Below are positions 16,921 to 47,151 of a stretch of 64,000 bases of DNA, piece by piece. Where the stretch lies: the IMG/VR virus record IMGVR_UViG_3300047548_001122, positions 124,001 to 188,000 of that record; one strand, written 5' to 3'. The number at the start of each line of letters is the position of its first letter. The first letter of the stretch is position 1. A model generated the notes under the pieces. The model was given only the letters and a program-made list of their open reading frames with translations. It was not told the origin of the DNA and did not search any database. Made by a program: the position numbers and the translations under genes.

Positions 16921-17505
16921 ATGAGTGAAATTTTAACACTTGATACTTCCGAAGGCATAACCAAATTTAAGGAAGAAAAACCTCAACTATTAGTTGTATA
17001 TTCTGATAAGCATCCAATGTTGAATGAAGTGATGCCTGAATATACTGAACCTCTACCAAATAAAGATATGTATGATTTGGTAAAGAATATGAAAGAAACC
17101 ATGAAGATTTATGGTGGTGTAGGACTTTCAGCTAATCAGTGTGGCATAAGAAAAAGAGTTTTTGTTATGGGTACAGATCAATTTCAAATTGCATGTATCA
17201 ATCCTAAAGTCTTAGAGGTGTCTGAAGAAAAAGAAAAACAAATAGAAGGATGTTTGTCTTTCCCTGCAATGTTTATGAAAGTCGAAAGACCAAAATCAGT
17301 TTTTGCTGAATATACTGATGAGAATGGAGAAGTTCATAGAGAATGGTTTCAAGGATTAACTGCACGTTGTTTTTTACATGAAACCGATCACATGAATGGA
17401 ATAAAATATACAAAATATGTTGGTCCAGTGGCCATTCGTATGGCTCAACAAAAACAGTTGAAAAAAATTAAAACTGTTAAAAGAAGAATGAAAAATGGCG
17501 TATAG
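16921..17505 (+). CDS. def: Peptide deformylase
   Basis: GVGLSANQCG, EGCLS, HETDH. Confidence 0.95.
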   Translation: MSEILTLDTSEGITKFKEEKPQLLVVYSDKHPMLNEVMPEYTEPLPNKDMYDLVKNMKETMKIYGGVGLSANQCGIRKRVFVMGTDQFQIACINPKVLEVSEEKEKQIEGCLSFPAMFMKVERPKSVFAEYTDENGEVHREWFQGLTARCFLHETDHMNGIKYTKYVGPVAIRMAQQKQLKKIKTVKRRMKNGV

Positions 17506-18772
17506 TTTTGATCCTAAAGATGATGTTGAAACTCAGTGGCAAAAGTGGCAAGACTCGGGTATTGAATATCAAAATATAGATGTCGATCAGTTACGTGAGA
17601 AAACCATAAAAGAACTTACGTATGTGTCTGGCATGGATGTTAAAGAATACACACTGTTTCAAAAGTGGTGTGAGGTTCAAGAAAAATATCCTACGATGTT
17701 GGTCAACGACCTATGGGAAGGCGAAAAGAAAGTTCTCATAGATGATGAACAAAGAAGGTCGATTGAAGAGATTAAAAATAATTTTTGGGTACCTAGTACA
17801 CCTGAAGATTATCTAAACTTACAACCAGAATTAATTTACACAAATAAAGAAGATAATCTACCAGAGTTATGGAACACTATACGAACATTTTCTTCCACAA
17901 TGAAGAACAACTCGAATATTGGACGTAATTTAAACTTTATTGTTCGTGACAAAGTAACTAAAAAATATCTTGGTGTTATCTGCATTAGTTCCGACTTCTT
18001 AGATTTGACACCAAGAGATAACTTTATTGGCTGGTCCAGAGAATTAAAAACTCAAGGTGGTATGATTAATCATACAGCTATAGGATCAACAATCGTTCCT
18101 TTACAACCTTTGGGTTATAATTATGTGGGTGGCAAATTACTTGCTCTATTGTGTTTGTCTGATCCTGTACAACAGTTATGGGAAAAACTTTACGGAGATA
18201 AATTAGTATCTGTAACTACTACATCATTATATGGTAAAACAAAAGCCGGTGGATTATCACAATACGATAATTTGGATCATTGGTTGCCGATGGGTTTTAC
18301 TTCTGGCTCTGTTTCATTTGAACCTTTGACCGATACTAGATACATGATACGTGAATGGTTGAAAACAAATCATACCAGAAAATATTTTGAGTGGTATGTT
18401 GCAAAGAAACCTTCTGGACAACCACATAAAAGAGATCATAAAAATCGATCTTTAAATTTTACATACACACAGTTAAGCATACCAAAAGAATTGATTCGTT
18501 CTGAACATGCAAGAGGAATTTATTTTTCACCGTTATATGATAAGTCTTGTGAATTTTTACGTGGTGACCATGACGGTAAAAATATGAATAAGTTATTTGA
18601 CACCAGTGTTGAATCGTTGGTTGATATCTGGAAAACTAAACACGCTAAACCGAGAATCAAACAATTGGTAAAAAAAGATAAAGTATCTTATGATACCTTG
18701 TTCTATGATGATTTGTGCTACTTAACTTGGGAAGAAACAAAAGAAAAATACCTTCCACAAGTTGGTCGGTAA
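17495..18772 (+). CDS. DruA/DUF4338-like protein, paralog A (Mom-like GNAT fold inferred)
   Basis: GRNLNFIVRD..YLGVI, PRDNFIGW, IVPLQPLGYNYVGGKLLAL, VTTTSLYG..SQYDNL match the DruA pattern as I recall it. Confidence 0.65.
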   Translation: MAYSFDPKDDVETQWQKWQDSGIEYQNIDVDQLREKTIKELTYVSGMDVKEYTLFQKWCEVQEKYPTMLVNDLWEGEKKVLIDDEQRRSIEEIKNNFWVPSTPEDYLNLQPELIYTNKEDNLPELWNTIRTFSSTMKNNSNIGRNLNFIVRDKVTKKYLGVICISSDFLDLTPRDNFIGWSRELKTQGGMINHTAIGSTIVPLQPLGYNYVGGKLLALLCLSDPVQQLWEKLYGDKLVSVTTTSLYGKTKAGGLSQYDNLDHWLPMGFTSGSVSFEPLTDTRYMIREWLKTNHTRKYFEWYVAKKPSGQPHKRDHKNRSLNFTYTQLSIPKELIRSEHARGIYFSPLYDKSCEFLRGDHDGKNMNKLFDTSVESLVDIWKTKHAKPRIKQLVKKDKVSYDTLFYDDLCYLTWEETKEKYLPQVGR

Positions 18773-21256: not shown

Positions 21257-21257
21257 T

Positions 21258-21308
21258 GTTGTGCCGAAACAACACTGGGCTTGACTTTTTAGTTCAGTGT
21301 GTTATAAT
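21258..21308 (+). promoter_or_regulatory. Sigma70-type promoter for AAA gene with upstream palindrome
   Basis: GTTGT-N6-ACAAC then TTGACT (21281)-16 bp-TATAAT (21303); shares GGCTTGACTTTT...TGTGTTATAAT with the 18935 promoter. Confidence 0.7.
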
Positions 21309-21346
21309 GTTTGTATAAATTGATTGATCCTAACGGAGATTATATT

Positions 21347-25849: not shown

Positions 25850-26130
25850 ATGGAGAAACAAATGCTGTTTTCAAATGGATACGTGATGACTTTAATTCCT
25901 ATCCTTCTCGCTTTGCTGCCGAGTTTATTGCTTGGGTTATTAGCATCGGGTGTAGTCTTACTATGGCACTTACCGTACCGAATCCTCCCCTTCTGGTTTT
26001 ATATCCTTTTTGGATTACTGGTTGTGTTATCTATGCTTGGGCTGCTTATAGCAGGAGATCGTTTGGTATGCTTGCGAACTATTTGTTGATTGTTACAATC
26101 GATACTATTGGTTTGATAAGGATGTTATAA
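25846..26130 (+). CDS. Small membrane protein
   Basis: About three hydrophobic segments; ATGA overlap with gp44. Confidence 0.6.
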   Translation: MNGETNAVFKWIRDDFNSYPSRFAAEFIAWVISIGCSLTMALTVPNPPLLVLYPFWITGCVIYAWAAYSRRSFGMLANYLLIVTIDTIGLIRML

Positions 26131-26131
26131 T

Positions 26132-27298
26132 ATGGAAGATACTGATTTTAATTCTTTTTCCAATAAACTTAGAAGAATTGGAAGAAAGTTTAAGTATAAA
26201 CGAAAACACAATCAAAGAAAACAAGGTGAAAGAAAACATATGGACAGAAATTTTAGTGATGGTCTAAATTGTAATGATGATGATATTGTCACACTTGCAG
26301 GTGTAGAAGATCGTTCTGAATTCTTTTTGAGTGGTGTATCGTTAAACGACCATTACATTTCTAAAATTGTGAATGAGAGAACTCGTCTAAAGAAAAGTAC
26401 AATTACATTCAGAGAATCGTTTATTTCCGATCATAAATCTTGGACAAAATTTTCAAGAGAAACGTATAAAGATTTACAAATCATTGAATTTAGTTCCGAT
26501 GCTGGAATGATTATTGACAATTTGAGTGTATGTTTTATTGATTATTCGGTTAATTCAAACGCTGTAGATGTTAAAGTTTATGGTGATAAAGAATTTGTGG
26601 AGTTTCATCATAAACTTTTACATAAGAATTTTAATACTTCTAAATCTAACATAGAATGGATGTATTCTGGTGATGGAAGTTCAGTGAGTATTCCACTATC
26701 ATCGGAAAAATTACCAGTAACAGAAATGTATCCTTTTCTAAAAGATGAAACTGTAGAAGAATATTATGATAGATATATGAACTCTTCTGCTTCGATTTTG
26801 CTTTTGATTGGACCACCAGGTACCGGTAAAACAACTTTCATTAGAGGTCTGTTGCACTATACTGGTAAAAACGCACTTGTTACTTATGATGAAAAACTTC
26901 TAGAAAAAGATTATGTGTTTGCTAGATTTCTGGAAGATGATGCCAACTTTATGATTATTGAAGATGCTGATAATTTTATCATCTCAAGAAAAGAAGGTAA
27001 TACGATGATGCATCGATTCTTGAATGTTGGTGACGGTCTTGTTGGTGTAAAAGGTAAAAAATTAATTTTCTCTACGAATCTACCTTCTATTGATGATATT
27101 GATTCTGCTTTGATTCGTCCTGGCCGTTGCTTTGATATTCTTCATTTCGATAACTATACTGAAGAACAGGCTAAGAACATTTCTAAAAAACTCAATATTG
27201 AATTGGTTAAGAAAGATAATGGAACTTATTCTTTGGCGGAAGTATTTCATAATGAAATTAAAGCACCAAAAAATACGAAAAAAATGGGTTTTTATTGA
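26132..27298 (+). CDS. AAA+ ATPase (BCS1/FtsH-like AAA module)
   Basis: GPPGTGKTT, IIEDAD, IFSTN, DSALIRPGRCF. Confidence 0.85.
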   Translation: MEDTDFNSFSNKLRRIGRKFKYKRKHNQRKQGERKHMDRNFSDGLNCNDDDIVTLAGVEDRSEFFLSGVSLNDHYISKIVNERTRLKKSTITFRESFISDHKSWTKFSRETYKDLQIIEFSSDAGMIIDNLSVCFIDYSVNSNAVDVKVYGDKEFVEFHHKLLHKNFNTSKSNIEWMYSGDGSSVSIPLSSEKLPVTEMYPFLKDETVEEYYDRYMNSSASILLLIGPPGTGKTTFIRGLLHYTGKNALVTYDEKLLEKDYVFARFLEDDANFMIIEDADNFIISRKEGNTMMHRFLNVGDGLVGVKGKKLIFSTNLPSIDDIDSALIRPGRCFDILHFDNYTEEQAKNISKKLNIELVKKDNGTYSLAEVFHNEIKAPKNTKKMGFY

Positions 27299-35329: not shown

Positions 35330-35621
35330 GTATTCCATAGATTATAGGGATGAAAATACCTATTTTACCATACTTGATGGTAAATATCAAAACGTCACCG
35401 TAACTTACTCGCAAACCCAATTCTTTGAAGATGAGGGTTTTGCGAGGTTAAAATTCAATTATAATGTCATAGATTCTTCAACATTTGCCTTAGAACAGTT
35501 GACAGACGATCAAGAATTTGTTATAATGTTAGGTGATATCTTACAAGACTACATTCTAGTGAAGGCAAAAAATCTTGAAACAGTTAGAGACAGTAATTCT
35601 GAAGAACTTGATTTTCAATGA
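35265..35621 (+). CDS. Hypothetical protein at the T4 gp40 position
   Basis: Overlaps uvsX end and gp41 start; AAGGA RBS; identity with gp40 not established. Confidence 0.5.
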   Translation: MKLLMEILCKIFPWMKKQQSPKYSIDYRDENTYFTILDGKYQNVTVTYSQTQFFEDEGFARLKFNYNVIDSSTFALEQLTDDQEFVIMLGDILQDYILVKAKNLETVRDSNSEELDFQ

Positions 35622-36981
35622 AGAGTATACCCGTAAAGTATTTCCTTTCATAAAACACGAATATTTTTCAGATAACGTACACAAAAAATTCTTCAATGAA
35701 GTAAAACGTTTTATTGAAGAATATAAAACTCCTCCTACCTACGAATCACTACTCATCGATTTTACCGAATCTAAAAGATTAACACAAACCGAAGTGAACG
35801 GTTGTGTTGATTTGTTGCGTGAACTAAATTCAAATAAGAATGAAAGTTCCGAAATGGAATGGCTGATTGACCAAACAGAAAAGTTTTGTCAAGATAAAGC
35901 AATCTATAATGCAATCATGAATTCGGTCAGTATTCTTGACCAAAGTGGTGAAGATAAGAAATCTAAAGGTGAGATACCTAAACTTCTCAGTGATGCATTG
36001 GCCGTATCTTTTGATAATCATATTGGTCATGATTATGTAAATGATTTTGATGCACGGTATGATTTCTATCACAAACAAGAAACGCGGATTCAATTTGACC
36101 TTGATATCTTTAATAGGATTACCAAAGGTGGTCTTCCAATTAAAACTCTGAATATCGCACTTGCTGGCACAGGCGTTGGTAAATCTTTGTTCATGTGTCA
36201 CGTTGCCGCATCTTGTATATCACAAGGTAAAAATGTTTTGTATATTACACTTGAGATGGCCGAAGAAAAGATTGCAGAACGTATAGATGCTAATCTTTTG
36301 AATGTAGACTTGAATGAGTTATATACTTTGACTAAAGATGATTATGGTCGAAAGTTTAATCACCTGAAAACCAAACTCAATGGTAAATTAATCATCAAAG
36401 AATATCCGACTGCATCGGCATCAACACTTCATTTCAGAGCTTTGTTGAATGAATTGCAATTGAAGAAGAATTTTAAACCTGATATTGTGTTTATCGATTA
36501 TCTGAATATTTGTTCATCATCTCGTATTAAACCTGGTGCGAACGTGAATAGTTATTCTTATATCAAAGCAATTGCAGAAGAACTTCGTGGTCTTGCAGTT
36601 GAATTTGCTGTGCCTGTTGTTTCTGCTACACAGACAACTAGAAGTGGTTTTACAAATACTGATCCTGGTCTAGAAGATACTTCAGAATCTTTTGGTCTGC
36701 CAGCAACAGCAGACTTTATGTTTGCTTTGATTAGTACTGAAGAACTTGAACAGTTGAATCAGATTATGGTGAAACAGTTGAAGAATCGTTACGGTGATCC
36801 AAATCATTTCAAACGATTCGTTGTAGGTATTGATAGAGCTAAGATGAAATTGTATGATGCTGAACCTGATGCACAGAATGATATTTCAGATTCAGGTCAA
36901 CCAAATGATACACCTCCATTAAATACATTTGGTAATCGTGAGAGTAAATTTAACAAAAACTTTGGCGGAATTAAAGTATGA
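35575..36981 (+). CDS. gp41: Replicative DnaB-like helicase (TTG start)
   Basis: AGTGVGKS, ITLEMAEE, IDYLNI, SATQTTR, SESFGLPATAD, QLKNRY. Confidence 0.97.
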   Translation: MKQLETVILKNLIFNEEYTRKVFPFIKHEYFSDNVHKKFFNEVKRFIEEYKTPPTYESLLIDFTESKRLTQTEVNGCVDLLRELNSNKNESSEMEWLIDQTEKFCQDKAIYNAIMNSVSILDQSGEDKKSKGEIPKLLSDALAVSFDNHIGHDYVNDFDARYDFYHKQETRIQFDLDIFNRITKGGLPIKTLNIALAGTGVGKSLFMCHVAASCISQGKNVLYITLEMAEEKIAERIDANLLNVDLNELYTLTKDDYGRKFNHLKTKLNGKLIIKEYPTASASTLHFRALLNELQLKKNFKPDIVFIDYLNICSSSRIKPGANVNSYSYIKAIAEELRGLAVEFAVPVVSATQTTRSGFTNTDPGLEDTSESFGLPATADFMFALISTEELEQLNQIMVKQLKNRYGDPNHFKRFVVGIDRAKMKLYDAEPDAQNDISDSGQPNDTPPLNTFGNRESKFNKNFGGIKV

Positions 36982-38093
36982 GTTTGAATAAAGATCAAGC
37001 AATTTATTGTGCGAATGTATTCTCAAACTATTTCGATAGATTCGAAAGAATAGATGAATACATGCGTGAACAAAAGTTGTCATCTATGTCAGAGAGGTCA
37101 CCAACACTTTTTGGTATGGGACCTGAAGATGATTTGTTTTCAGACTTCACGGTTTCACCAGAAAAAATGAACTTTGAAGTTGTCGAACTTTCGCAAGAAA
37201 AGTGGGACATTTATTTGAATATGATTTCTTCTCATTCAAACATGACAAGTATTCCTGGTCGCTGCTTGAGATTGGCTGTACTAGAAACTACAACCAATAA
37301 ATGGTGTGGTTTTATTAGACTAGGTTCGCCAGTAATTAATTGTAAACCTAGAAATGAAATGTTGGGTCAAGTGTTCACTCAAACTGAAGGTGGCGCACAG
37401 TTATTTAATCGATGCGCTATCATGGGTTTTGTTATTGTACCTGCACAGCCATTTGGTTATAATTACCTTGGTGGTAAATTGATGGCTGCGATTTGTACTA
37501 CACATGAAGTACGTGAAATGTTGAACAAGAAATATAACATGACAACTTGTTTGTTTGAAACAACCAGTTTATACGGTTCAACTAAGGCTGTATCACAATA
37601 TGATGGCATGAAACCTTATATTCGATACAAAGGTTTGACAGATAGTGATTTTCTTCCTATGTTACATGGTAAAACATACACCGATCTAAAAGAATATATG
37701 GAAGAAATTATTGGTGAACCACTCGCACCAGAAGGTGCTTCTAGTCGTAAACTAAAGATATCAAATGCCATGGTGTCACATATCAATACTGCTTTGAAGG
37801 GTACACCAGAAGGTGCCAAGTTTAAAAAGACCATAGAAAATGCAAAGAATCTGAACGAACAAAAGCGTTACTATGTTTCAGATTATGGGTTTAGTAACAT
37901 GGTTGACTTTGTTAATGGAAAAACAACTAAACTGATTGCTGGTGAAAACTATGAAAAGTTTCATTTGAAAAACATAATTGAGTGGTGGAGAAAGAAAGCC
38001 ATTAACAGATTTGAAACGTTAAAGACTGAGAATAGACTTAGGACAGAGATCGAAGTCTGGACAGGCGAAAAAGAGATTGACATTATTCGGTAG
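36978..38093 (+). CDS. DruA/DUF4338-like protein, paralog B
   Basis: PGRCLRLAV..KWCGFIRLGSP, IVPAQPFGYNYLGGKLMA, ETTSLYG..SQYD shared with 17495..18772. Confidence 0.65.
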   Translation: MSLNKDQAIYCANVFSNYFDRFERIDEYMREQKLSSMSERSPTLFGMGPEDDLFSDFTVSPEKMNFEVVELSQEKWDIYLNMISSHSNMTSIPGRCLRLAVLETTTNKWCGFIRLGSPVINCKPRNEMLGQVFTQTEGGAQLFNRCAIMGFVIVPAQPFGYNYLGGKLMAAICTTHEVREMLNKKYNMTTCLFETTSLYGSTKAVSQYDGMKPYIRYKGLTDSDFLPMLHGKTYTDLKEYMEEIIGEPLAPEGASSRKLKISNAMVSHINTALKGTPEGAKFKKTIENAKNLNEQKRYYVSDYGFSNMVDFVNGKTTKLIAGENYEKFHLKNIIEWWRKKAINRFETLKTENRLRTEIEVWTGEKEIDIIR

Positions 38094-38102
38094 TCCTGAT
38101 AG

Positions 38103-38127
38103 GATAAATACTCCATTATAAGTGGAG
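38103..38127 (+). promoter_or_regulatory. Late promoter variant plus SD-sequestering hairpin
   Basis: GATAAATA followed by CTCCATT-ATA-AGTGGAG hairpin containing the GGAG RBS. Confidence 0.6.
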
Positions 38128-38133
38128 ATTTAA

Positions 38134-39318
38134 ATGGCAGGCAATGCAATAGAAACCGCGAAACAAGAAAACGGATCAAAAGTTTATTTCGAATTAGTAA
38201 TAGAAAACGGAAAAGACCCGGACAAAGATTTTGCTGTTTTAGCGACAGCTGTAAAAAAAGTATATTCTAATGTAAATAATGAGTGGATGGAATCTTATGC
38301 GAAACAGGCACGAGCCTTGAAAGAATATATTGGTAGAAATAAGGGTTATGAGTACTCCCGTGATGATGGGTTTATGCCATTTATTGAAAACATTGCGAAA
38401 CAAAAATGTGGTGTTTCAGTTAAAGATCGTTGGGACCCTGCTGACATTTACATGGTAAAAAAATCCAAAAGAAAAGAAATTGAAGCCAAAATAAAACAGA
38501 TAACATCCACTCCAGATAAAGATACAAACCTATTGGCATTAAATGATTACATGAGAGAACTGATGCAATCTCTTGATATGTTACCAGTTTCATTAAAAGC
38601 TATTAAAAAATCCACAACAAAGGCTAAAGCTGAACCTGCGAACATAGGAGCTAAAGGTAAAAAAGTTTCTTTTGAAGTTGTTCCAGGTTCAGTAAAATGT
38701 TTATTAGATTTTGGACATAAAACTCCAAACGAATTCGATACGGGTGAATTTGCATTTGATTTTAAAGTTGGTGATGAAGAGATTCACGGACAAGCTCGTA
38801 ACTTTCAGTATTCAAAAGCAAGAAACTTAGTTCAAACGGATTTGACACCAAAAGGTCGGTCTGGTGGTGCAAAACTTGGTAAAGTATCTTCTGAAGCATT
38901 AGATACTTTTTTAAAAAAAATTAATTTGCCAAGACCAGCATCTGCTGCCAAAGATCCAAATATTGATTTGCCTGGTGAATGGAAAAAAGAAAATATTGAT
39001 TATTGGATAAAGTATATAGAAAATCTAAAGAGTGAAAAGATTGCTGGCCGACCTATTGATTTAGGTGGACTGAAAGTAAAAAATGGTAATAAAGAAACTG
39101 TGGGTGCAGAAGAAGTAATCAAAAATGCTATTATATCTGAAAATAAAACAAGAAGTTCTGCTGGTCGTTTTTCATCCAAGTTGATTGGATTAAGATGGGC
39201 TTATACATGGGCTTTAATAGAAAAAAAAGGAAAGATGGATGAATGGTTACAAACTTTATATTATGGTGCTAAAAAAGAATTTGGTGGTAAAAACGGACCA
39301 TTTTTAAAAATATACTAA
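38134..39318 (+). CDS. Putative PD-(D/E)XK-like nuclease
   Basis: KDRWDPADIYMV ... PVSLK pattern. Confidence 0.5.
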   Translation: MAGNAIETAKQENGSKVYFELVIENGKDPDKDFAVLATAVKKVYSNVNNEWMESYAKQARALKEYIGRNKGYEYSRDDGFMPFIENIAKQKCGVSVKDRWDPADIYMVKKSKRKEIEAKIKQITSTPDKDTNLLALNDYMRELMQSLDMLPVSLKAIKKSTTKAKAEPANIGAKGKKVSFEVVPGSVKCLLDFGHKTPNEFDTGEFAFDFKVGDEEIHGQARNFQYSKARNLVQTDLTPKGRSGGAKLGKVSSEALDTFLKKINLPRPASAAKDPNIDLPGEWKKENIDYWIKYIENLKSEKIAGRPIDLGGLKVKNGNKETVGAEEVIKNAIISENKTRSSAGRFSSKLIGLRWAYTWALIEKKGKMDEWLQTLYYGAKKEFGGKNGPFLKIY

Positions 39319-39319
39319 T

Positions 39320-40549
39320 ATGAAATTTTTAGACTTTTTAGTAGAAGCCAAAAATGAAGGCGCAAATCTACACCTAGAACATCTAGAAGATAATATATTT
39401 AATTTTGGTGTAAATGGTACTCGACAATCAATTGATTTTTTAAGATCATTAAGAGATATGTTAGCAGGTCATTCACAATCAAAAGTAAATATTACAACAA
39501 AATGGGATGGAGCTCCAGCTGTTATATGTGGAATAAATCCTGAAAACGGAAAGTTTTTTGTTGGAACAAAATCTGTTTTCAACAAAGATGGTAAATTAAA
39601 TTACACCGATGATGATATTGATAAGAATCATCCTGGTGGGGGATTAAATGAGAAATTAAAAATAGCATTGGCCTTTTTACCAAAACTTGGCATCAAAGGT
39701 ATATTACAAGGTGATTTGTTATTTACCAAAGGTGATATACAATCAGAAACAATTGACGGACAAAAATATATAAAGTTTCAACCAAATACTATTGTGTATG
39801 CGGTGCCAACCGATTCAGTTATGGCTAAAAAAATGTTAGCCTCTCAAATGGGAATAGTTTTTCATACTTCTTATTCAGGAAGAACGATAGATACATTGAA
39901 AGCCTCCTTCAATATTGACATTGGAAATTTAACACAAACTAAAGACGTTTGGTTCCGAGATGCTTCTTTTGTTGATGCGTCTGGTACTGCAACATTCACC
40001 GATAAAGAAACTCAAGCAATAACCTCTCTATTATCTCAAGCAGGTAGAGTTTTTCAAACCATAAATCCTGTCGTGTTAAATAGAATATCCTCTGGAATAT
40101 TTAAAGAACAAATTAAGACATTCAATAATACAAAGATTAGATCAGGACAAAAAATAACAAATACTGGCCAACATGTTTCAGAATTAATTAAATATATTGA
40201 AGATAAACTAAACAAAGAAATACTTGTTGCAAAAAAAGAAGATACAAAGAAGAAAAGAATTGCCGAAAAGAATGAAGTGATGAGGTTCTATAGAGGAAGT
40301 GCCAATCAATTAAAATCTGTTTTTGATTTGATGAACTTAATAGTTGATGCTAAGTTAATGATAATAAGAAAATTGGAATCAATCAAATCTTCAGTAGATA
40401 CCTTTGTTAGAACAGAAGATGGTTATAGAGTTACTGGTCCAGAAGGGTTTGTGGCAGTAGATAGAATAAGTGGTGGTGCATTGAAGTTAGTTGATCGACT
40501 AGAATTTAGTCAGACCAACTTTAATGCCGCAAAAAATTGGAGCAAATAA
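39320..40549 (+). CDS. Polynucleotide ligase-like nucleotidyltransferase (DUF6267-like), putative internal protein
   Basis: TKWDG (motif I), QGDLLF (III), PEGFV (IV), KLV (V); MKFLDFLVE N-terminus. Confidence 0.6.
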   Translation: MKFLDFLVEAKNEGANLHLEHLEDNIFNFGVNGTRQSIDFLRSLRDMLAGHSQSKVNITTKWDGAPAVICGINPENGKFFVGTKSVFNKDGKLNYTDDDIDKNHPGGGLNEKLKIALAFLPKLGIKGILQGDLLFTKGDIQSETIDGQKYIKFQPNTIVYAVPTDSVMAKKMLASQMGIVFHTSYSGRTIDTLKASFNIDIGNLTQTKDVWFRDASFVDASGTATFTDKETQAITSLLSQAGRVFQTINPVVLNRISSGIFKEQIKTFNNTKIRSGQKITNTGQHVSELIKYIEDKLNKEILVAKKEDTKKKRIAEKNEVMRFYRGSANQLKSVFDLMNLIVDAKLMIIRKLESIKSSVDTFVRTEDGYRVTGPEGFVAVDRISGGALKLVDRLEFSQTNFNAAKNWSK

Positions 40550-40822: not shown

Positions 40823-41212
40823 ATGGCATATTCAACTCAAGTATTAGATCATTACGAAAATCCTAGAAACGTAGGTAAATTTGATATAGGTGATGAAAGT
40901 GTTGGCACAGGATTAGTAGGTGCTCCAGCTTGTGGTGACGTTTTGAAATTGCAGATAAAAGTAGAAGATAATATTATCACTGATGCGAAATTTAAAACAT
41001 ATGGTTGCGGTAGTGCTATTGCTTCGTCATCATTAGTAACTGAATGGGTCAAAGGAAAAACACTTGAAGAAGCGGGTGCAATTAAGAACACTGAAATTGC
41101 AGAAGAGTTAGCTCTACCACCAGTAAAGATACATTGTTCAATCTTAGCTGAAGATGCTATTAAAGCAGCAATCAAAGACTATCAAGATAAAAACTTAACA
41201 AAGGCTGCATAA
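40823..41212 (+). CDS. iscU: Fe-S cluster scaffold IscU
   Basis: DHYENPRNVG, GAPACGDV, FKTYGCGSAIASSS, LPPVKIHCS (three Cys + His). Confidence 0.97.
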   Translation: MAYSTQVLDHYENPRNVGKFDIGDESVGTGLVGAPACGDVLKLQIKVEDNIITDAKFKTYGCGSAIASSSLVTEWVKGKTLEEAGAIKNTEIAEELALPPVKIHCSILAEDAIKAAIKDYQDKNLTKAA

Positions 41213-41503: not shown

Positions 41504-42337
41504 ATGAAAGATTTGATTATAGGATGTTCCACCAACTACGATTGGTCTAAGTTAAAATATTGGATCAATTCTATCAATGCATCAGGATTTGAAGGTGATA
41601 AAATCCTGATTCTAATGAACTGTGATGCTGAAACAGTTAAAAAAATTACAGAAGCAGGTTTCGGTGTAATTGGATTCAATCAAGATGAACAAGGTAATTT
41701 GAGTTATAGTTCTTCAATGCCTGTCCACACCGAAAGATTTTTACACATCTACAATTATTTAAAAGACAGAGACTATCGTTATGTAATCACAACCGATGTT
41801 AAAGATGTTGTCTTTCAAAAAAATCCTATCGAATATCTTGAAGCGGAATGTATTTCTAAAAATCTAATTTTTGCTTCCGAAAGTATCAAGTATAAAGACG
41901 AACCTTGGGGTGACCAAAACCTAAAAGAAACTTTTGGTCCATACATCTACGAACAGTTTAAGAACAATGAAATCTTCAACGTTGGTGTTTTGGCTGGTCA
42001 CGGCTACGCTATTCGTGATTTAGCTTTGAACATTTTTGTCGCTAGTTTAAATCGTCCTATTCCAATTTGTGACCAATCTACGTTTAATTTCCTCATTAGT
42101 CAAAACCCTTACACCTCATTGAGTAAGTATTGTTTCTCTGAAGATGGTTGGGCTGCACAACTAGGAACAACAGGTGATCCATCAAAATCTGCACAATTCG
42201 ATCCTTTGTTACTCGAAGAGAAACCAAAATTTGATGGTAATATTGTAACTACATCAAAAGGTAAAGAATTCTATATTGTACACCAATATGATAGAGTTCC
42301 AGAAATGAAAAAGGTCATTGAGGAAAAATTTGCATGA
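41504..42337 (+). CDS. GT-A-like glycosyltransferase
   Basis: YVITTDVKDVVFQ (DxxD), FNVGVLAG, DQSTFN, HQYDR. Confidence 0.6.
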   Translation: MKDLIIGCSTNYDWSKLKYWINSINASGFEGDKILILMNCDAETVKKITEAGFGVIGFNQDEQGNLSYSSSMPVHTERFLHIYNYLKDRDYRYVITTDVKDVVFQKNPIEYLEAECISKNLIFASESIKYKDEPWGDQNLKETFGPYIYEQFKNNEIFNVGVLAGHGYAIRDLALNIFVASLNRPIPICDQSTFNFLISQNPYTSLSKYCFSEDGWAAQLGTTGDPSKSAQFDPLLLEEKPKFDGNIVTTSKGKEFYIVHQYDRVPEMKKVIEEKFA

Positions 42338-43290
42338 AACGTCTATTGTTTGTAGTTCATCGTTATGCTCCTTATCCTGGCGGTTCTGAAAATTATGTCA
42401 GAGATATGGCCGAAGAATGTGTTCGGAGAGGACATGATGTTTCTGTTTTCACTGGCGAACACAAAGGCGATTTGAATGGAGTAAAAGTTACATCAGACGT
42501 AAATATTCTAGGTCAAAAGTTTGATCTCATTATCGTTCATGGCGGCGACGTTGGCTTACAAAATTTAGTATTGATGAACGCAGAAAGAATACCTTCACCA
42601 ATACTATTCATGATTATAAAACCATCCGAAAGTCCTGTTTATATTCATGCGATGAACACCGTAAAATACCTAGGATGTTCTGCACCAGAGGATTATGAAT
42701 TATTGAAAAAACATAATCACATGAATAAGTGTGTTAGAGTTATTCATGGTATAGATGAAAAGATATCAGTTGGTATGACAGGTTTTAGAGAGAAGTATGG
42801 TATAGAAACAAAATATATGTTTTTATCGTGTGGAGGTTTCTGGCCAAATAAAGCAATGAATGAACTCGCACAAATATTCAATGATATTGGAAGAGATGAT
42901 GCTACGCTAGTATTAACAGGTTATGATAACAGACATAACATTCGTCCAATTGATACGAAATATGTTAAGACATTTATGATAGAAGATAGAGAAGATGTTT
43001 TGTCGGCCATTCGTGATGCAGATTTATACATTATGCATTCCTTCAGTGAAGGGTTTGGTTTAGTTCTTCTAGAGTCTATGTTAAATAAAACTCCTTGGGC
43101 TTCTAGAAAAATTGCTGGTGCTAATTTAATGAGTGAGTTTGGATTTACATACGAAAATGACCATCAACTTAGAGAATATATTTTAGATTTTGATGGTAAT
43201 AAAGATGCACAAATAGAAAATGCATATGAGTATGTAACATTAAATCATATGATAAAAAATACAGTTGATGATATTATGAGGTTAGTATGA
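42334..43290 (+). CDS. GT4 (GT-B) glycosyltransferase
   Basis: YPGGSE, ADLYIMHSFSEGFGLVLLESM (EX7E). Confidence 0.85.
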   Translation: MKRLLFVVHRYAPYPGGSENYVRDMAEECVRRGHDVSVFTGEHKGDLNGVKVTSDVNILGQKFDLIIVHGGDVGLQNLVLMNAERIPSPILFMIIKPSESPVYIHAMNTVKYLGCSAPEDYELLKKHNHMNKCVRVIHGIDEKISVGMTGFREKYGIETKYMFLSCGGFWPNKAMNELAQIFNDIGRDDATLVLTGYDNRHNIRPIDTKYVKTFMIEDREDVLSAIRDADLYIMHSFSEGFGLVLLESMLNKTPWASRKIAGANLMSEFGFTYENDHQLREYILDFDGNKDAQIENAYEYVTLNHMIKNTVDDIMRLV

Positions 43291-43922
43291 ATTTTACTTT
43301 TGGTATTCTTACAAAATACGATGATGAAGAAAAACTAAAAGAAGTTATAGACTCGATACACAATCTAAACATTCCGGAAAATGGTGGTGATTATCAAGTT
43401 TTGGTAATAGGCGAAAAGAAAGTAGAAGGATCAAAATATGAGAGGTACATTTATTTTGATGAAACTGCCAAACCAGCCTGGATAACCAAAAAGAAAAATT
43501 TATTGGCTCGTGCCGCAAATTTTCAAAACATTGTTTTAATGCACGATTACTTTGTTTTTGATAAAGATTGGTATAAAAACTTTTTAGAGTTTGGAAATGA
43601 TTGGGACATTTGTTCTTGTCCACAATATCTAATAAACGGTAAACGACATTTTACCGATTGGGTTTGTTGGGATTCACCTTTATTTCCGAGATATACTTCA
43701 TTACATTATGATGATTGGTCACATGTGAATTACATGTATCAATCTGGCGGTTTCGTTGTTGCAAAAACACAGTTGATTATTGATAATCCATTCAATGAAC
43801 AATTAGGTTGGGGTCAAGCTGACGATGTTGAATGGTCTCTCCGAGTGAGACATAGATACAAGTATGTTTGTAATGGAAAAAGTATAGTGAGACATAATAA
43901 GGTACATCGTGATGCGAAATAA
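43287..43922 (+). CDS. GT-A-like glycosyltransferase
   Basis: ITKKKN..A, IVLMHDY, WGQADDVEWS. Confidence 0.65.
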   Translation: MNFTFGILTKYDDEEKLKEVIDSIHNLNIPENGGDYQVLVIGEKKVEGSKYERYIYFDETAKPAWITKKKNLLARAANFQNIVLMHDYFVFDKDWYKNFLEFGNDWDICSCPQYLINGKRHFTDWVCWDSPLFPRYTSLHYDDWSHVNYMYQSGGFVVAKTQLIIDNPFNEQLGWGQADDVEWSLRVRHRYKYVCNGKSIVRHNKVHRDAK

Positions 43923-45282
43923 ATTAATTATATTTGACTTAGATGGTGTTTTGATTGAATCTAGAGAATTGCATTATCACGCTCTTAATGATGCATTAAG
44001 AAAAGTCGATGAACGTTATGTAATTGACCGAGAAGAACACCTCAGTGTTTATGATGGTTTAAACACCACTAGAAAACTTGAAATGTTGACCGAAAGAAAA
44101 GGTCTGCCTACGAGTTTCTACGATCAAGTATGGCAAGATAAACAGTCAGCAACTTTTGAATTAATCAAACAGTTTCCAAAAAATCCAACCTTAATAGAAT
44201 TTTTCAGTAGTCTAAAATCGCAAGGTATAAAAGTTGCCGTTGCAAGTAACTCTATACGTGAAACGGTAAAGCTTGCTTTAATATCTATAGGTGTGTTAGA
44301 ATATGTAGATTACTTTGTAAGTAATGAGGATGTTAGGAGACCCAAGCCATATCCAGAGATGTATTGGCAATGCATGACCGTTTTAAATGCATTGCCAAAA
44401 ACTACAGTTATCTTTGAAGATAGTCACATTGGTAGAGAGGGTGCTTTAAATTCTGGAGCTCACTTAATTCCATTAAAAGATTCTTTTGATTTGACCAAAG
44501 ACAAAATAGACGATGCGCTTGATATATTAAATGGAATTAAAAAAACAAATATACCATGGAGAAATAAAAAAATGAATGTATTGATACCAATGGCAGGCGC
44601 AGGTAGTAGATTTGCTGCAGCAGGTTATACTTTTCCAAAACCTCTAATCGAAGTTCGTGGAAAACCAATGATTCAGGTTGTTGTGGAAAATCTTAATGTT
44701 GAAGCGCACTTCATTTTCATTGTACAAAAAGAACACTACGAAAAGTATAATCTAAAACAATTGTTGAATCTTATTGCTCCAGGTTGCGACATAATCCAGG
44801 TTGACGGTATAACAGAAGGTGCTGCGTGTACAACATTACTCGCAAAAGAACTTATTAATAACGGTGAACCTCTATTGATGGCAAACTCGGATCAATTTGT
44901 TGAGTGGAATTCCAATGAGTGTTTATATGCATTTACTGCTGATACTATCGATGGTGGTATAGTTACTTTTGAAGCCACGCATCCAAAGTGGTCTTTTGCT
45001 AAATTGGATGAAAATGGTTTTGTTTCAGAAGTTGCGGAGAAAAAACCAATCTCGAATATTGCAACGGTAGGAATATATTATTGGAAACAAGGTAGCGATT
45101 ATGTTAAGTATGCTGAACAGATGATACAGAAAAACATTCGTGTCAATAATGAATTCTATGTTTGTCCAGTATTTAATGAAGCAATTGCCGATGGTAAAAA
45201 GATAAGAACCAAACATATCGAAAGAATGTGGGGAATAGGAACACCAGAAGATTTAAATTACTTTTTGGAGAACCATAAATGA
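43909..45282 (+). CDS. HAD phosphatase fused to sugar nucleotidyltransferase
   Basis: FDLDGVL, VASNS, KPYPE, FEDS; then IPMAGAGSRF...PKPLI, ANSDQ, GTPEDL. Confidence 0.88.
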   Translation: MMRNKLIIFDLDGVLIESRELHYHALNDALRKVDERYVIDREEHLSVYDGLNTTRKLEMLTERKGLPTSFYDQVWQDKQSATFELIKQFPKNPTLIEFFSSLKSQGIKVAVASNSIRETVKLALISIGVLEYVDYFVSNEDVRRPKPYPEMYWQCMTVLNALPKTTVIFEDSHIGREGALNSGAHLIPLKDSFDLTKDKIDDALDILNGIKKTNIPWRNKKMNVLIPMAGAGSRFAAAGYTFPKPLIEVRGKPMIQVVVENLNVEAHFIFIVQKEHYEKYNLKQLLNLIAPGCDIIQVDGITEGAACTTLLAKELINNGEPLLMANSDQFVEWNSNECLYAFTADTIDGGIVTFEATHPKWSFAKLDENGFVSEVAEKKPISNIATVGIYYWKQGSDYVKYAEQMIQKNIRVNNEFYVCPVFNEAIADGKKIRTKHIERMWGIGTPEDLNYFLENHK

Positions 45283-46007
45283 GAGTTGCTGTCGTATTGA
45301 CCGGACACCTAAGGTGCTGGAAACAAGTGTTTCCGAATTTTAAAGAAAAAGTAATTGATCGATATAACCCAGATATATTCATTCATACTTGGGATGAAGA
45401 AGGCTGGTGGATACCTGGTGATAAACAAAATGAAAAAGGTTTCTTTGAGGGTACACCTGAGATTGTAGATCAAGAAGTGATTGATGCTTACAAACCTTTA
45501 TACTTTGTAAAAGAATATTGGGACGATTTTAATCAACACTTCGAACAGTGTGGAACTTATTTTAAAAACTTCGCACACAGACCAAAAAATATACTTTCGA
45601 TGTATTATAAAATGCATCAAGGATTTTCTTTGGTTGAAAAACATCTGGCACAACTACAGGGAAATTATGATCTAGTCATTCGTATGCGACCAGACATGGT
45701 TTTTCATGAGGATCTTCCTGATTTTAATATGGGAACTTTCTATACTATTGCTCACAGAAATCATCTAGGTCAAGGAACTGGAGATTTGATGCAAGTTGGT
45801 AGTGTGGGACAAATGTTATTCTTTACAAAAATTATTTGTTTTATTTCTGAATTATATAAACAAACAGACTTATTATGTCCTCATGTTATAACTGAACAAC
45901 ATATAACAAATTTAAGATTGAACTGGAAAGAATTTAATATCAACAAAACTTTAATGCATACGCCGAAGGGTGCTTATGTAGAAATGGATAAAATAAATGC
46001 TGAATGA
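45279..46007 (+). CDS. Glycosyltransferase-like hypothetical protein
   Basis: VAVVLTGHLR, FIHTWD, YDLVIRMRPD. Confidence 0.55.
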   Translation: MRVAVVLTGHLRCWKQVFPNFKEKVIDRYNPDIFIHTWDEEGWWIPGDKQNEKGFFEGTPEIVDQEVIDAYKPLYFVKEYWDDFNQHFEQCGTYFKNFAHRPKNILSMYYKMHQGFSLVEKHLAQLQGNYDLVIRMRPDMVFHEDLPDFNMGTFYTIAHRNHLGQGTGDLMQVGSVGQMLFFTKIICFISELYKQTDLLCPHVITEQHITNLRLNWKEFNINKTLMHTPKGAYVEMDKINAE

Positions 46008-46671
46008 AATTTTAAAATTAGATGATGGTCCAATTAAGTATGAGCCAAGTGGCCGTGGACATATTAAGATGGTGGGACATTCTGTGCCATACAGTATTAT
46101 GCAAAAAGAATTTGATTTTTTACATAATATCATTGTAGAAAATAATTTACAAAGAGGTTTCGAATTAGCCACAGCATTCGGTATTTCCGGTACAGCAATA
46201 GGCACAGCTTTCAAAAAAACAGGTGGAAAGTTTGTAACCATGGATGCGTATATTGAAGAGAAGTATGATAACGCAGGAACGTATGAACATTTCCAAAAAG
46301 AAGTTTATGAAAAGTCTGATGGATATAAAAGTGTAAATTATCTCATAGATAAATTTGAATTAAGAGATACGATGTTTGCTGAAATTGGTTGGTCTCCAGA
46401 CGATGTTGACAGTATAGTTGGAAAACATTTCACGGAAAAATTAGATTTTGTATTTTTGGATGCTGGACATTTTGGCGACCAGATGATTAAAGATATTAAA
46501 GAAATAAATAAACACTTAGATGAAAAATTTGTTTTTGTGTTCCACGATATTTACCCTTGGAGTTGCACACAAGAAGTTCATAATCTGTGTATAGAATTGT
46601 TTGGAAAAGATATTGATATTAAACTTCCTTATCCGGAAGGAGAAAATTTAGGCATAATTTCATGTTTATAA
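45997..46671 (+). CDS. Class I SAM-dependent methyltransferase (Methyltransf_24-like)
   Basis: FELATAFGISG, DFVFLDAGH, VFHDI. Confidence 0.72.
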   Translation: MLNEILKLDDGPIKYEPSGRGHIKMVGHSVPYSIMQKEFDFLHNIIVENNLQRGFELATAFGISGTAIGTAFKKTGGKFVTMDAYIEEKYDNAGTYEHFQKEVYEKSDGYKSVNYLIDKFELRDTMFAEIGWSPDDVDSIVGKHFTEKLDFVFLDAGHFGDQMIKDIKEINKHLDEKFVFVFHDIYPWSCTQEVHNLCIELFGKDIDIKLPYPEGENLGIISCL

Positions 46672-47126
46672 TTTCACATAGAGCTAATTTAAACGGTCCA
46701 GACCCATCAATCGAAAATAAACCTGAATCAATTGTTCACGCTATCGATCAGGGATTTTCGGTTGAGGTTGATCTTCGAATGAAAGATCAAAAACTATATT
46801 TTGGACATGATGAAGCTCAATATGAAACTGATATTAATTTTTTAAAGAAGTACAAACAATATCTATGGATTCATTGTAAAGAAATGGAAACCATGGAGTT
46901 TTGTCTTGAACAGGCTCTACACTGTTTCTGGCATAACGATGATGATTATACACTGACAAATTACAGATATGTCTGGGCATACCCCGGAAAAGAACCTGTC
47001 GGCAAACTAACGATAATGGTGATGCCAGAAAGGCACTGGAGTCCAGAAGAAACCCTATCAAAAAAACCATTTGGAGTATGCACAGACTACCCTTATGCGT
47101 ATCAAGATATTATAAATAAGAGATAA
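46662..47126 (+). CDS. PLC/GDPD-like phosphodiesterase
   Basis: ISHRAN..G, EN, VEVDL, FGHD, WIHCK, GVCTDY. Confidence 0.7.
   Translation: MFIISHRANLNGPDPSIENKPESIVHAIDQGFSVEVDLRMKDQKLYFGHDEAQYETDINFLKKYKQYLWIHCKEMETMEFCLEQALHCFWHNDDDYTLTNYRYVWAYPGKEPVGKLTIMVMPERHWSPEETLSKKPFGVCTDYPYAYQDIINKR
47111..47118 (+). promoter_or_regulatory. Late promoter TATAAATA for the internal-protein cluster
   Basis: Exact consensus 34 nt upstream of ATG 47152. Confidence 0.8.
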
Positions 47127-47151
47127 AATAACACTGCTGTAGAGGCGGAGA

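What the first reader, a model, noticed from the sequence alone, without database searches (positions are those of the whole stretch)
36978..38093. Second DruA-like paralog translationally coupled to the gp41 helicase
Seen: shares GRxL..V, IVPxQPxGYNYxGGKL and TTSLYG..SQYD with 17495..18772, and overlaps the gp41 stop (ATGA). Two diverged paralogs embedded in the recombination and replication operons suggest a replication-coupled role, such as a heterodimer or two sequence specificities. No Druantia DruE-like helicase is in this window, so a defence-protein family may be repurposed by the phage.
Basis: partly seen in the sequence, partly recalled or inferred. Interest (0 to 1): 0.7.

Follow-up and report, generated by a model that had tools for sequence, protein, structure and literature searches.

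The report
Phage DruA-family acyltransferase beside replication helicase
The gene after the phage's replicative helicase encodes a conserved acyltransferase-fold enzyme related to bacterial DruA, a protein of the Druantia anti-phage defence system whose activity is unknown; with its older paralog it probably marks nucleic acid chemically, but no activity was tested.

Summary
ORF 36978-38093 (371 aa, "B") and ORF 17495-18772 (425 aa, "A") both pass Pfam DruA/DUF4338 (PF14236) and share the quoted motifs (35% identity, E 3e-24). B's ATG overlaps the gp41 stop (ATGA).

B's model is a GNAT acyltransferase fold matching E. coli DruA end to end (TM 0.70). For both paralogs the nearest solved structure is phage Mu Mom, a DNA-adenine modifying GNAT, but no sequence-level link to Mom exists.

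The genome is a complete 214-kb freshwater T4-like phage with no DruE-type gene, so this is a family member, not a Druantia system.

B sits among replisome genes in hundreds of aquatic T4-like phages: after gp41, after gp43, or between gp44 and gp62. A and B are old lineages, not a recent duplication. They usually co-occur in this clade, but cyanophages carry only B and pelagiphage Mosig only A.

Relatives fused to ParB_N, or sitting beside a ParB_N-DNA methylase and a radical-SAM gene, point to DNA modification. That is inference; no activity was tested. The heterodimer idea got no answer.

DruA-like cyanophage genes were already noted in print. Verdict: a new variant of a known family, of moderate interest.

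The parts
36978..38093 (+). Paralog B: 371-aa DUF4338/DruA-family GNAT-fold protein (PHROG 19197)
   Evidence: ORF. PF14236 38.9 bits. phrog_19197 E 3.9e-141. AF2 model pLDDT 88.9. Matches E. coli DruA P0DW34 at TM 0.70. dN/dS about 0.06 against an 87%-identical ortholog.
35575..36981 (+). gp41-type replicative (DnaB-like) helicase; its TGA stop overlaps B's ATG (ATGA at 36978-36981)
   Evidence: PF03796 and phrog_19. Junction sequence. The same junction is kept in at least 46 of 76 related loci.
35499..35527 (+). Perfect sigma-70-type promoter match (TTGACA-17-TATAAT, 12/12, with TG) in the 245-nt gap before gp41; probable start of an early gp41+B transcript
   Evidence: Consensus scan only. 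No RNA data could be found.
37155..37652 (+). GNAT core, strands beta1-beta6 (residues 60-225)
   Evidence: Secondary structure of the model. GNAT matches at Z 8-10 over model residues about 60-315.
37446..37481 (+). QPFGYNYLGGKL (residues 157-168), the beta4-alpha3 loop; Q-x-x-G-x-N resembles the GNAT pyrophosphate-binding motif Q/R-x-x-G-x-G/A
   Evidence: Q157, P158, G160, N162, G165, G166, K167 and L168 are invariant or nearly so in 27 B-clade sequences, and most are kept in A and allies. The reading as a CoA loop is inference.
37560..37607 (+). TTSLYG (195-200, beta5) and SQYDG (206-210); Y208 is kept in every branch aligned, including Druantia DruA and IS-linked copies
   Evidence: Alignments.
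37668..37847 (+). Three-helix insertion (residues 231-290) between the last two GNAT strands, in the same topological place as the essential HTH-like insertion of Mom
   Evidence: Model secondary structure. Mom description in PMC13219725. The equivalence is inferred from element order, not from a residue-level superposition.
37965..38027 (+). Basic C-terminal helix with W337, K340 and R344 (WWRKKAxxR)
38076..38090 (+). Conserved extreme C-terminal tail IDIIR (A ends QVGR). (V/I)(G/I)R-COOH is shared by the viral A and B clades and absent from Druantia DruA; its role is unexplained
   Evidence: Alignments and C-termini.
17495..18772 (+). Paralog A: 425-aa DUF4338/DruA-family protein; its start overlaps the peptide deformylase gene by 11 nt; it lies between gp46/gp47 and the CobT/CobS-like genes
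   Evidence: The same synteny holds in HTVC008M and Mosig. AF2 model pLDDT 88.9, with Mom again the top solved match.

Best explanation
B is a catalytically competent acyltransferase of the GNAT superfamily, belonging to the DUF4338/DruA family. It is a phage-specific clade that is widespread in aquatic T4-like myoviruses. It is probably made early, from the sigma-70-like promoter ahead of gp41, and translated in step with the helicase through the ATGA overlap.

The most likely job is transfer of an acyl group onto a nucleic-acid base, most probably the phage's own newly made DNA. The donor would be acyl-CoA, or an aminoacyl group from charged tRNA as in Mom. This would be a Mom-like self-marking that blunts host nucleases. 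Paralog A, an older sister lineage closer to Druantia DruA, would be a second enzyme with a different target or sequence context.

Shown: family, fold, conserved motifs, purifying selection, synteny.
Inferred: catalysis, donor, nucleic-acid target, protective purpose.
For: Family and fold:
- PF14236 and PADLOC DruA hits.
- End-to-end fold match to E. coli DruA: E 1.6e-12, TM 0.70/0.65, 360 residues aligned.
- A profile of the viral proteins finds Druantia-linked DruA genes at E 1e-34 to 1e-37.

Enzyme-like conservation:
- The QPFGxN..GGKL, TTSLYG and SQY motifs are invariant or nearly so.
- dN/dS is about 0.06.

Nucleic-acid leaning:
- For both B and A the best solved structure is Mom, the tRNA-dependent DNA N6-adenine modifier. 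Z is 10.3, with the longest alignment (168 and 170 residues).
- After DruA, the Swiss-Prot fold hits are dominated by TmcA, the tRNA cytidine N4-acetyltransferase.
- Mom is among the next viral fold hits.
- Relatives are fused to ParB_N (P0204, P0234, P0248, L116). A homologous ParB_N module is fused to an N6/N4 DNA methylase in L125 and L128.
- In L125 and L128 that methylase, a radical-SAM gene and a B-clade DruA-like gene form a co-directional cluster in which the DruA-like start overlaps the radical-SAM gene's end.
- Aravind's group lists DUF4338 as a GNAT domain fused to DndF (PMC10853773).

Timing and place:
- B is repeatedly embedded among replisome genes.
- A perfect promoter match lies before gp41.
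Against: - No activity, substrate or DNA modification was observed.
- Mom's lead over generic protein and small-molecule GNATs is small (Z 10.3 against 9.8 for B and 9.3 for A). A shared fold does not give a function.
- Profile-profile comparison with the Mom family finds nothing (probability 0.3%), and PF25680 does not hit the genome. Mom's essential residues R111, S124, D149 and R151 could not be mapped.
- The ParB_N, methylase and radical-SAM contexts come from distant relatives, not from T4-like phages. The phage's own radical-SAM genes are unrelated to that one.
- B is not strongly basic overall (pI 8.0; A 6.7).
- Replication-module location in T4-like phages is shared by many early genes of unrelated function, and B can lie elsewhere (L122, beside gp23 on the opposite strand).
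Confidence: 0.4

Rival explanations
1. B (and A) acetylate or otherwise acylate a protein rather than nucleic acid. The target could be a host or phage replication, transcription or translation factor, as other phage GNATs do. For A it could be nascent N-termini, given its overlap with the peptide deformylase gene.
For: Most structural neighbours just below Mom are protein or small-molecule N-acetyltransferases such as RimI, NatA/Naa50/Naa60 and SpeG, at Z 8-9.8. A follows the deformylase gene in the window, HTVC008M and Mosig. The Rac acetyltransferase of phiKMV-like phages, which targets RNA polymerase, is a precedent (PMC7824862).
Against: The family's recurrent partners elsewhere are DNA-directed: ParB_N, DNA methylase, DndF, transposases and the Druantia helicase. 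The deformylase adjacency is lost in L103, where A lies between gp44 and gp62. The extra helical insertion and basic C-terminal helix are not typical of RimI- or Nat-type enzymes.
Confidence: 0.2
2. B modifies RNA, for example a tRNA base as TmcA does (ac4C), to tune translation during infection.
For: 15 of the top 30 Swiss-Prot fold hits are TmcA orthologs; the alignments take in the GNAT domain and most of the region after it (E 2e-3 to 7e-2). Mom itself binds tRNA (PMC13219725).
Against: TM-scores to TmcA are low (0.25-0.30), and the TmcA helicase/ATPase module is absent. The window has no tRNA genes. The contexts of relatives are DNA-related.
Confidence: 0.12
3. A and B work only together, as an obligate heterodimer coupled to the replisome.
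For: Both are present in the window's genome, in HTVC008M, and in all five larger related viral contigs examined. In L104 and L106 two DruA-like genes sit in tandem between gp41 and gp43. Mom acts as a dimer.
Against: About 25 cyanophages carry B alone and Mosig carries A alone. A and B are separated by the deepest, fully supported split of the tree. Complex prediction gave ipSAE 0.00, which the tool says counts neither for nor against.
Confidence: 0.12
4. B is a non-catalytic mimic or decoy of DruA that blocks Druantia type I, or a selfish mobile gene like the IS-linked DUF4338 copies, inserted between essential genes as homing-endonuclease genes are in T4.
For: B's position varies between lineages (after gp41, after gp43, between gp44 and gp62, beside gp23). 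Bacterial DUF4338 genes are often multicopy and fused or linked to transposases.
Against: Enzyme-type motifs are invariant, and they are stricter in the viral clades than in Druantia DruA. Purifying selection is strong. Position is stable within clades: 65 of 68 informative loci have gp41 directly upstream. No nuclease or transposase lies beside B. No sequence-level mimicry of Druantia DruA is seen beyond family membership (16% identity).
Confidence: 0.06

Closest known systems
DruA of type I Druantia (Pfam PF14236 / DUF4338; E. coli UMEA 4076-1 DruA, UniProt P0DW34)
   Same: Same Pfam family, above threshold. The whole-chain architecture matches: N-terminal helices, GNAT core, helical insertion and C-terminal helix (TM 0.70, 360 residues). 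The GGKL, TT..G, S.Y and W...R positions are shared.
   Different: No druBCDE partners in the genome. About 16% identity. The viral clades have QPFGxN and TTSLYG where Druantia DruA has PPY(S/N) and TTxxxxG, and they end in (V/I)(G/I)R, which Druantia DruA lacks. B lies across the deepest split of the tree from Druantia DruA. DruA's own activity is unknown.
Mom of phage Mu (PF25680; PDB 8BV8), Gly-tRNA-dependent N6-adenine DNA modification
   Same: GNAT fold with an extra helical element between the last strands. Best solved structural match for both A and B (Z 10.3). A phage-encoded single enzyme.
   Different: No sequence or profile similarity. The catalytic residues could not be mapped. B keeps a Q-x-x-G type loop that Mom lacks at the corresponding place in its sequence (own reading). 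B is about 130 aa longer. B appears to be an early gene in the replisome cluster, whereas Mom is a late gene under Com control (the latter from general knowledge). The label 'methylcarbamoylase mom' given to the S-SCSM2R ortholog (PMC12801897) rests on fold resemblance only.
DruA-like CDS of Synechococcus phages noted by the Phold preprint (10.1101/2025.08.05.668817)
   Same: These are B-clade orthologs (S-PRM1 and others, 46% identical to B).
   Different: The preprint reports only structural similarity to DruA. The second paralog, the replisome synteny, the ParB_N, methylase and radical-SAM links and the Mom resemblance are not discussed there.
TmcA / NAT10-type tRNA cytidine N4-acetyltransferases
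   Same: GNAT plus a following helical region. These are recurrent fold hits after DruA. They acylate an exocyclic base amine.
   Different: No helicase/ATPase module. Low TM-scores (0.25-0.30). No sequence similarity.

Membership tests
DUF4338 / DruA protein family (PF14236) | Match to the Pfam model above its gathering score (27 bits) | tested here: met
   B 38.9 bits, A 69.9 bits. The same result comes from the six-frame genome search. PADLOC DruA PDLC00002 gives E 4.7e-11 and 1.4e-16.
DUF4338 / DruA protein family (PF14236) | Whole-protein fold like a bona fide DruA | tested here: met
   Foldseek against E. coli DruA P0DW34: E 1.6e-12, TM 0.70/0.65, query residues 25-354.
DUF4338 / DruA protein family (PF14236) | Sequence homology to DruA genes that are physically linked to a DruE-type gene | tested here: met
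   In G062 and G223 the DruA genes lie beside, or about 10 kb from, 1847-1865-aa ORFs that carry the MZB domain. A profile of the viral proteins hits them at E 1e-35.
Druantia type I defence system | druA accompanied by druB-druE, above all the large YprA-type helicase DruE with its DUF1998/MZB domain | tested here: not met
   PF09369 has no match at E<=10 in the complete 214-kb genome. B's neighbours are gp41, phrog_1462 and DUF6267.
Mom family (PF25680) | Match to the family model or profile | tested here: not met
   No PF25680 match in the genome at E<=10. hhalign of A1 against Mom, and of A2 against a 26-sequence Mom alignment, gives probability 0.2-0.3%.
Mom family (PF25680) | GNAT fold with an essential helical insertion forming a DNA cleft | tested here: inconclusive
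   Mom is the top solved match for both paralogs (Z 10.3; 168 and 170 residues aligned), but only 0.5-1.0 Z above generic GNATs. The insertion sits in the equivalent topological position by element order only.
Mom family (PF25680) | Essential residues R111, S124, D149 and R151; use of Gly-tRNA(Gly); formation of 6-NcmdA in DNA | not testable with these tools
   No residue-level superposition or assay is available. The sequences cannot be aligned.
GNAT superfamily | beta1-alpha1-alpha2-beta2-beta3-beta4-alpha3-beta5-alpha4-beta6-beta7 fold | tested here: met
   60 solved chains at Z>=8; the 50 listed are almost all GNATs. All Foldseek PDB hits are acetyltransferase folds.
GNAT superfamily | Acyl-CoA pyrophosphate loop Q/R-x-x-G-x-G/A at beta4-alpha3 and a conserved Tyr after beta5 | tested here: inconclusive
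   Q157-P-F-G160-Y-N162 fits five of the six positions and is nearly invariant. Y208 is invariant across all branches. CoA binding was not tested.
IS-associated DUF4338 genes | Multicopy in a genome, fused or adjacent to a transposase | tested here: not met
   The genome has two copies that are only 35% identical. No transposase-like neighbour was seen. The IS-type copies carry different motifs, ETFVD and Y(R/K)AANW.

The most novel reading that the evidence does not exclude
Aquatic T4-like phages, including abundant pelagiphages and cyanophages, carry a replisome-coupled DNA acylation system not yet described. It would be built from one or two ancient DruA-family GNATs. Working out its chemistry would also reveal the unknown biochemical activity of DruA in type I Druantia, namely a nucleic-acid acyltransferase.
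Probability: 0.3. Interest if true: 0.8.

Novelty: new variant of a known kind. Interest (0 to 1): 0.55.

Why it matters
DruA is a named component of a widespread anti-phage system, yet its activity is unknown. Here the same fold stands alone, without the helicase machinery, in a very abundant group of viruses: more than 6,000 protein clusters at 90% identity and 685 at 50%. It sits in the DNA replication cluster.

A standalone version is a simpler route to the family's chemistry. If it acylates DNA, that adds a new kind of phage DNA modification. It could also affect how freshwater and marine phage DNA behaves with restriction enzymes and in sequencing.

The analysis also shows that the published label 'Mom methylcarbamoylase' for a cyanophage ortholog rests on fold resemblance alone.

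Tried and rejected
- Phmmer of B against PDB sequences found nothing.
- Foldseek against PDB gave only weak GNAT hits (E>6e-3). The Foldseek-independent search was needed to see Mom.
- hhalign against a single Mom sequence and against a Mom family profile found nothing. I therefore rejected 'member of the Mom family'.
- Complex prediction of A with B gave ipSAE 0.00, 'no answer'. It is not used as evidence either way.
- No RNA-seq run could be listed for B, so co-transcription with gp41 is unverified and read laying was not used.
- The broad alignment A2 was too diverse for the genome scan. The narrower A3 worked.
- Using E. coli K-12 as a centre to sample Enterobacteriaceae was not possible. 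A Gammaproteobacteria sample centred on G009 was used instead.
- I tested for a link between the phage's own radical-SAM genes and the radical-SAM gene next to the DruA-like gene of L125/L128. There is no similarity.
- No tRNA genes lie in the window.
- B's C-terminal tail does not resemble the clamp-binding type C-terminus of this phage's gp43 (...IESFFG). A clamp-binding role was not pursued.
- One of the 22 Gammaproteobacteria genomes with PF14236 hits (G049, locus L147) is unpublished. It contributed one row to the 'IS-like' motif comparison. No conclusion depends on it.
Full report
**What is at the coordinates**

The window is part of a complete IMG/VR virus record: 214,237 bp, 127-bp direct terminal repeat, 34% G+C. 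The window corresponds to bases 124,001-188,000. Almost all genes are on the + strand.

PHROG and Pfam scans identify a T4-like myovirus. The gene order is:
- portal, scaffold and major head protein;
- UvsW-type helicase;
- gp47 and gp46;
- a 257-aa ORF;
- peptide deformylase;
- paralog A;
- CobT-like and CobS-like proteins;
- gp45 and gp44;
- an ATPase;
- gp62 and RegA;
- gp43;
- UvsX;
- gp41;
- paralog B;
- phrog_1462 and DUF6267;
- an IscU-like gene;
- glycosyltransferases.

Public runs that hold this DNA are freshwater and lake metagenomes. The nearest cultured relatives are the marine pelagiphages HTVC008M and Mosig, at 52-61% protein identity.

**Checking the observation**

ORF 36978-38093 (B, 371 aa) starts with an ATG that overlaps the TGA of gp41 (...gtATGAgt...).

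B and ORF 17495-18772 (A, 425 aa) both pass Pfam PF14236 (DruA, formerly DUF4338), at 38.9 and 69.9 bits against a cut-off of 27. Both also hit PADLOC's DruA model. No third copy exists in the genome.

The overlap itself is unremarkable here: 19 of 77 same-strand junctions in the window have the same 4-nt overlap. It is nevertheless conserved. An ATGA junction with the upstream gene is kept in at least 46 of 76 related loci, whether that gene is gp41 or gp43.

A perfect sigma-70 consensus with an extended -10 lies in the 245-nt gap before gp41 (35499-35527). No + strand terminator-like site was found in the gap after B. This suggests an early gp41+B transcript. It is a consensus match only, and no RNA run could be found.

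**Structure**

An AlphaFold2 model of B, built on 27 diverse homologs, is confident (pLDDT 88.9, pTM 0.84). Its elements in order are:
- N-terminal helices (residues 5-52);
- a GNAT core (beta1 at 66-70 through beta6 at 216-220);
- a three-helix insertion (231-290);
- the last strand (297-301);
- a long basic helix (330-350);
- a short conserved tail.

Against reviewed UniProt models, the top hit by far is E. coli DruA P0DW34 (E 1.6e-12, TM 0.70/0.65, 360 residues, query 25-354). Many TmcA tRNA cytidine acetyltransferases follow, at E 2e-3 and weaker.

Against solved structures, Foldseek finds only weak acetyltransferase folds. The Foldseek-independent search ranks phage Mu Mom (8BV8) first: Z 10.3, with 168 residues aligned, the longest alignment. 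Generic GNATs follow at Z 9.8-8.2.

A separate model of A (pLDDT 88.9) gives the same answer: Mom at Z 10.3 with 170 residues aligned, and the next match at 9.3.

Mom is now known to transfer glycine from Gly-tRNA(Gly) to N6 of adenine in dsDNA. It has an essential HTH-like insertion at about residues 175-209 (PMC13219725). From the order of elements, that insertion occupies the same topological place as B's insertion. This equivalence is my inference, not a residue-level result.

In the viral structure library, the best hits are giant-virus proteins (Faunusvirus, Yasminevirus, Dasosvirus). Mom of a Salmonella phage follows at rank 8.

**What it is not**

- The Mom Pfam model finds nothing in the genome.
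- Profile-profile comparison of the DruA-like alignment with a 26-sequence Mom alignment gives 0.3% probability.
- The annotation 'methylcarbamoylase mom' on the S-SCSM2R ortholog therefore rests on fold resemblance alone.
- The genome has no DUF1998/MZB domain, the hallmark of DruE. This is a DruA-family protein, not a Druantia system.

**Conservation**

The family is very large. There are more than 6,000 clusters at 90% identity with E<=1e-3 among the candidates scored, and 685 clusters at 50% identity. 594 of 600 scanned IMG/VR stretches encode a relative.

In the cultured-phage collection it occurs in only 31 of 50,697 records. All are Synechococcus or Pelagibacter myoviruses or uncultured marine viruses.

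Residues that are invariant or nearly so cluster in four places:
- Q157-P-F-G160-x-N162-x-x-G165-G166-K167-L168, in the beta4-alpha3 loop;
- T195-T-S-L-Y-G200, on beta5;
- S206-x-Y208;
- W337, K340 and R344.

The first motif resembles the GNAT Q/R-x-x-G-x-G/A pyrophosphate loop. Y208 is kept in every branch, including Druantia DruA and IS-linked copies. dN/dS against an 87%-identical ortholog is about 0.06. These are the marks of a working enzyme, although catalysis was not tested.

A tail ending in (V/I)(G/I)R-COOH is shared by the viral A and B clades and is absent from Druantia DruA. I have no explanation for it.

**Synteny**

Among the 80 closest IMG/VR loci (61-99% identity), 77 place B beside or between replisome genes. 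In the 68 of those that reach far enough upstream, the gene directly before B is gp41 (65 loci) or gp43 (3 loci). The gp43-B order is the one seen in HTVC008M.

More distant T4-like phages vary:
- S-SCSM2R and the phage contigs L131-L133 have B between gp44 and gp62.
- L124 and L127 have it after gp43.
- L103 has A between gp44 and gp62, and B after gp43.
- L104 and L106 have two DruA-like genes in tandem between gp41 and gp43.
- One contig (L122) has B on the opposite strand beside the major head gene.

A keeps the position deformylase - A - CobT-like - CobS-like in the window, HTVC008M and Mosig.

All five larger related viral contigs examined carry both A and B, and two carry a third short copy. 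Cyanophages carry only B and Mosig only A.

The linkage to replication genes is therefore real. The linkage of the two paralogs to each other is frequent but not obligatory.

**Phylogeny**

The tree has 109 sequences (IQ-TREE quick search, SH-aLRT support, unrooted). It splits with full support into a B clade of 48 rows and everything else. The other side holds:
- the A clade (26 rows, support 97);
- the ParB_N fusions;
- the Verrucomicrobia copies;
- a protein encoded next to a giant-virus capsid gene (P0252);
- the four full-length Gammaproteobacteria DruA genes, which are monophyletic (support 100). Two of these lie beside or near a DruE-type ORF.

A and B are thus old lineages, and A is the one nearer to Druantia DruA. 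Without a root, the direction of transfer between phage and defence system cannot be read.

Many 'MAG' rows are plainly phage contigs binned by mistake. T4-like genes flank them.

**Clues to function from relatives**

- Several relatives are ParB_N-DruA fusions (P0204, P0234, P0248, L116).
- In two independent contigs (L125≡L126, and L128) three genes form a co-directional cluster, and the third gene's start overlaps the second's end: a ParB_N-N6/N4 DNA methylase, a radical-SAM enzyme, and a B-clade DruA-like gene.
- The ParB_N module of that methylase is homologous to the one fused to DruA domains elsewhere.
- Aravind and colleagues list DUF4338 as a GNAT domain fused to DndF (PMC10853773).
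- In Gammaproteobacteria most PF14236 genes are multicopy or fused into 735-780-aa proteins. AlphaFold clusters label such proteins as IS402-like or ISAs1 transposases.

Every one of these partners acts on DNA. Together with the Mom and TmcA resemblances, this is why I favour acylation of a nucleic-acid base, most likely phage DNA.

**Limits**

Nothing here shows catalysis, a donor, a substrate or a modified base.
- Mom's lead over ordinary acetyltransferases is small.
- The informative gene contexts come from distant relatives.
- Position in the T4-type replication cluster is shared by many early genes.
- The A+B complex prediction returned 'no answer'.

I give the DNA-acylation model about 0.4. 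The rivals are:

| Rival model | Weight |
|---|---|
| Protein acylation | about 0.2 |
| RNA modification | about 0.12 |
| Obligate A-B heterodimer | about 0.12 |
| Decoy or selfish gene | about 0.06 |

**Novelty**

DruA-like genes in six Synechococcus phages were pointed out by the Phold preprint, and one ortholog was called Mom in print. The family itself is in Pfam and PHROGs with unknown function.

The following were not found in the searchable literature:
- the second, older paralog;
- the recurrent replisome synteny;
- the distinct viral motifs and C-terminal tail;
- the ParB_N, methylase and radical-SAM associations;
- the giant-virus members;
- the negative test against the Mom family.

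I rate it a new variant of a known kind, of moderate interest.

Noticed in passing
outside the window: own genome G000:C1 about 71,600-83,900 (locus L162 = 68,000-87,000): A co-directional cluster holds seven separate radical-SAM ORFs (252-374 aa, several with a Fer4_12 domain), interspersed with ORFs that have no family. This is unusual for a T4-like phage and may account for part of the large genome. They are unrelated to the radical-SAM gene next to the DruA-like gene of L125/L128.
   Followed up: partly
window 35499-35527 (+): A perfect sigma-70 consensus promoter (TTGACA-17-TATAAT with TG) lies in the 245-nt gap before gp41. A second 10/12 match with TG at 38077-38105 lies just before the next gene.
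   Followed up: partly
window 38134-39318 and 39320-40549 (+): Two large conserved genes of unknown function sit directly after B: phrog_1462 (394 aa) and DUF6267 / PF19782 (409 aa, E 1.6e-113). DUF6267 recurs in the same place in most related loci; phrog_1462 in only some.
   Followed up: no
window 25846-27298 (+): Between gp44 and gp62, the slot where cyanophages carry B, this phage has a 94-aa ORF and a 388-aa P-loop/AAA-type ATPase (phrog_14322; weak hits to defence-system ATPases in PADLOC).
   Followed up: no
window 41504-49896 (+): A run of sugar-related genes: two glycosyltransferase-like ORFs, a HAD-hydrolase fusion, and a 914-aa cytidylyltransferase-ATPase fusion. Whether they act on DNA, on a cell-surface sugar or on something else was not examined.
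   Followed up: no
window 16143-16916, 16921-17505, 18992-22537, 40823-41212 (+): Auxiliary genes surround paralog A and lie downstream of B: a 257-aa ORF with a weak methyltransferase hit, a peptide deformylase (overlapped by A's start), CobT-like and CobS/MoxR-like proteins, and an IscU/NifU-like scaffold.
   Followed up: no
L104:2279-4700 and L106:926-3470 (contigs binned as Thermoplasmata): Divergent T4-like phage fragments carry two DruA-like genes in tandem between gp41 and gp43. Both belong to the A side of the tree.
   Followed up: partly
L125:6947-10849 (identical in L126) and L128:7214-10867: A co-directional cluster of a ParB_N-N6/N4 DNA methylase, a radical-SAM enzyme and a 316-aa B-clade DruA-like gene, surrounded by ORFs with no family. 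It looks like a DNA-modification module of an unknown mobile element or phage.
   Followed up: partly
L100:2277-5033; BFVD entries A0A3G4ZXG3, A0A5K0UAJ3, A0A3G4ZRA1: DruA-fold domains occur in giant viruses of eukaryotes. One 918-aa protein is encoded next to an NCLDV major capsid gene, and there are Faunusvirus, Yasminevirus and Dasosvirus proteins.
   Followed up: no
G001:C1:44622-45020 and G002:C1:62095-62430 (related viral contigs): A third, short PF14236 ORF (203 and 193 aa, N-terminal half of the domain only) is present in two relatives and absent from the window's genome.
   Followed up: no
whole window: The runs that hold this DNA are freshwater and lake metagenomes, although the closest cultured phages infect marine SAR11. 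The host is unknown; a freshwater SAR11 relative is only a guess.
   Followed up: partly
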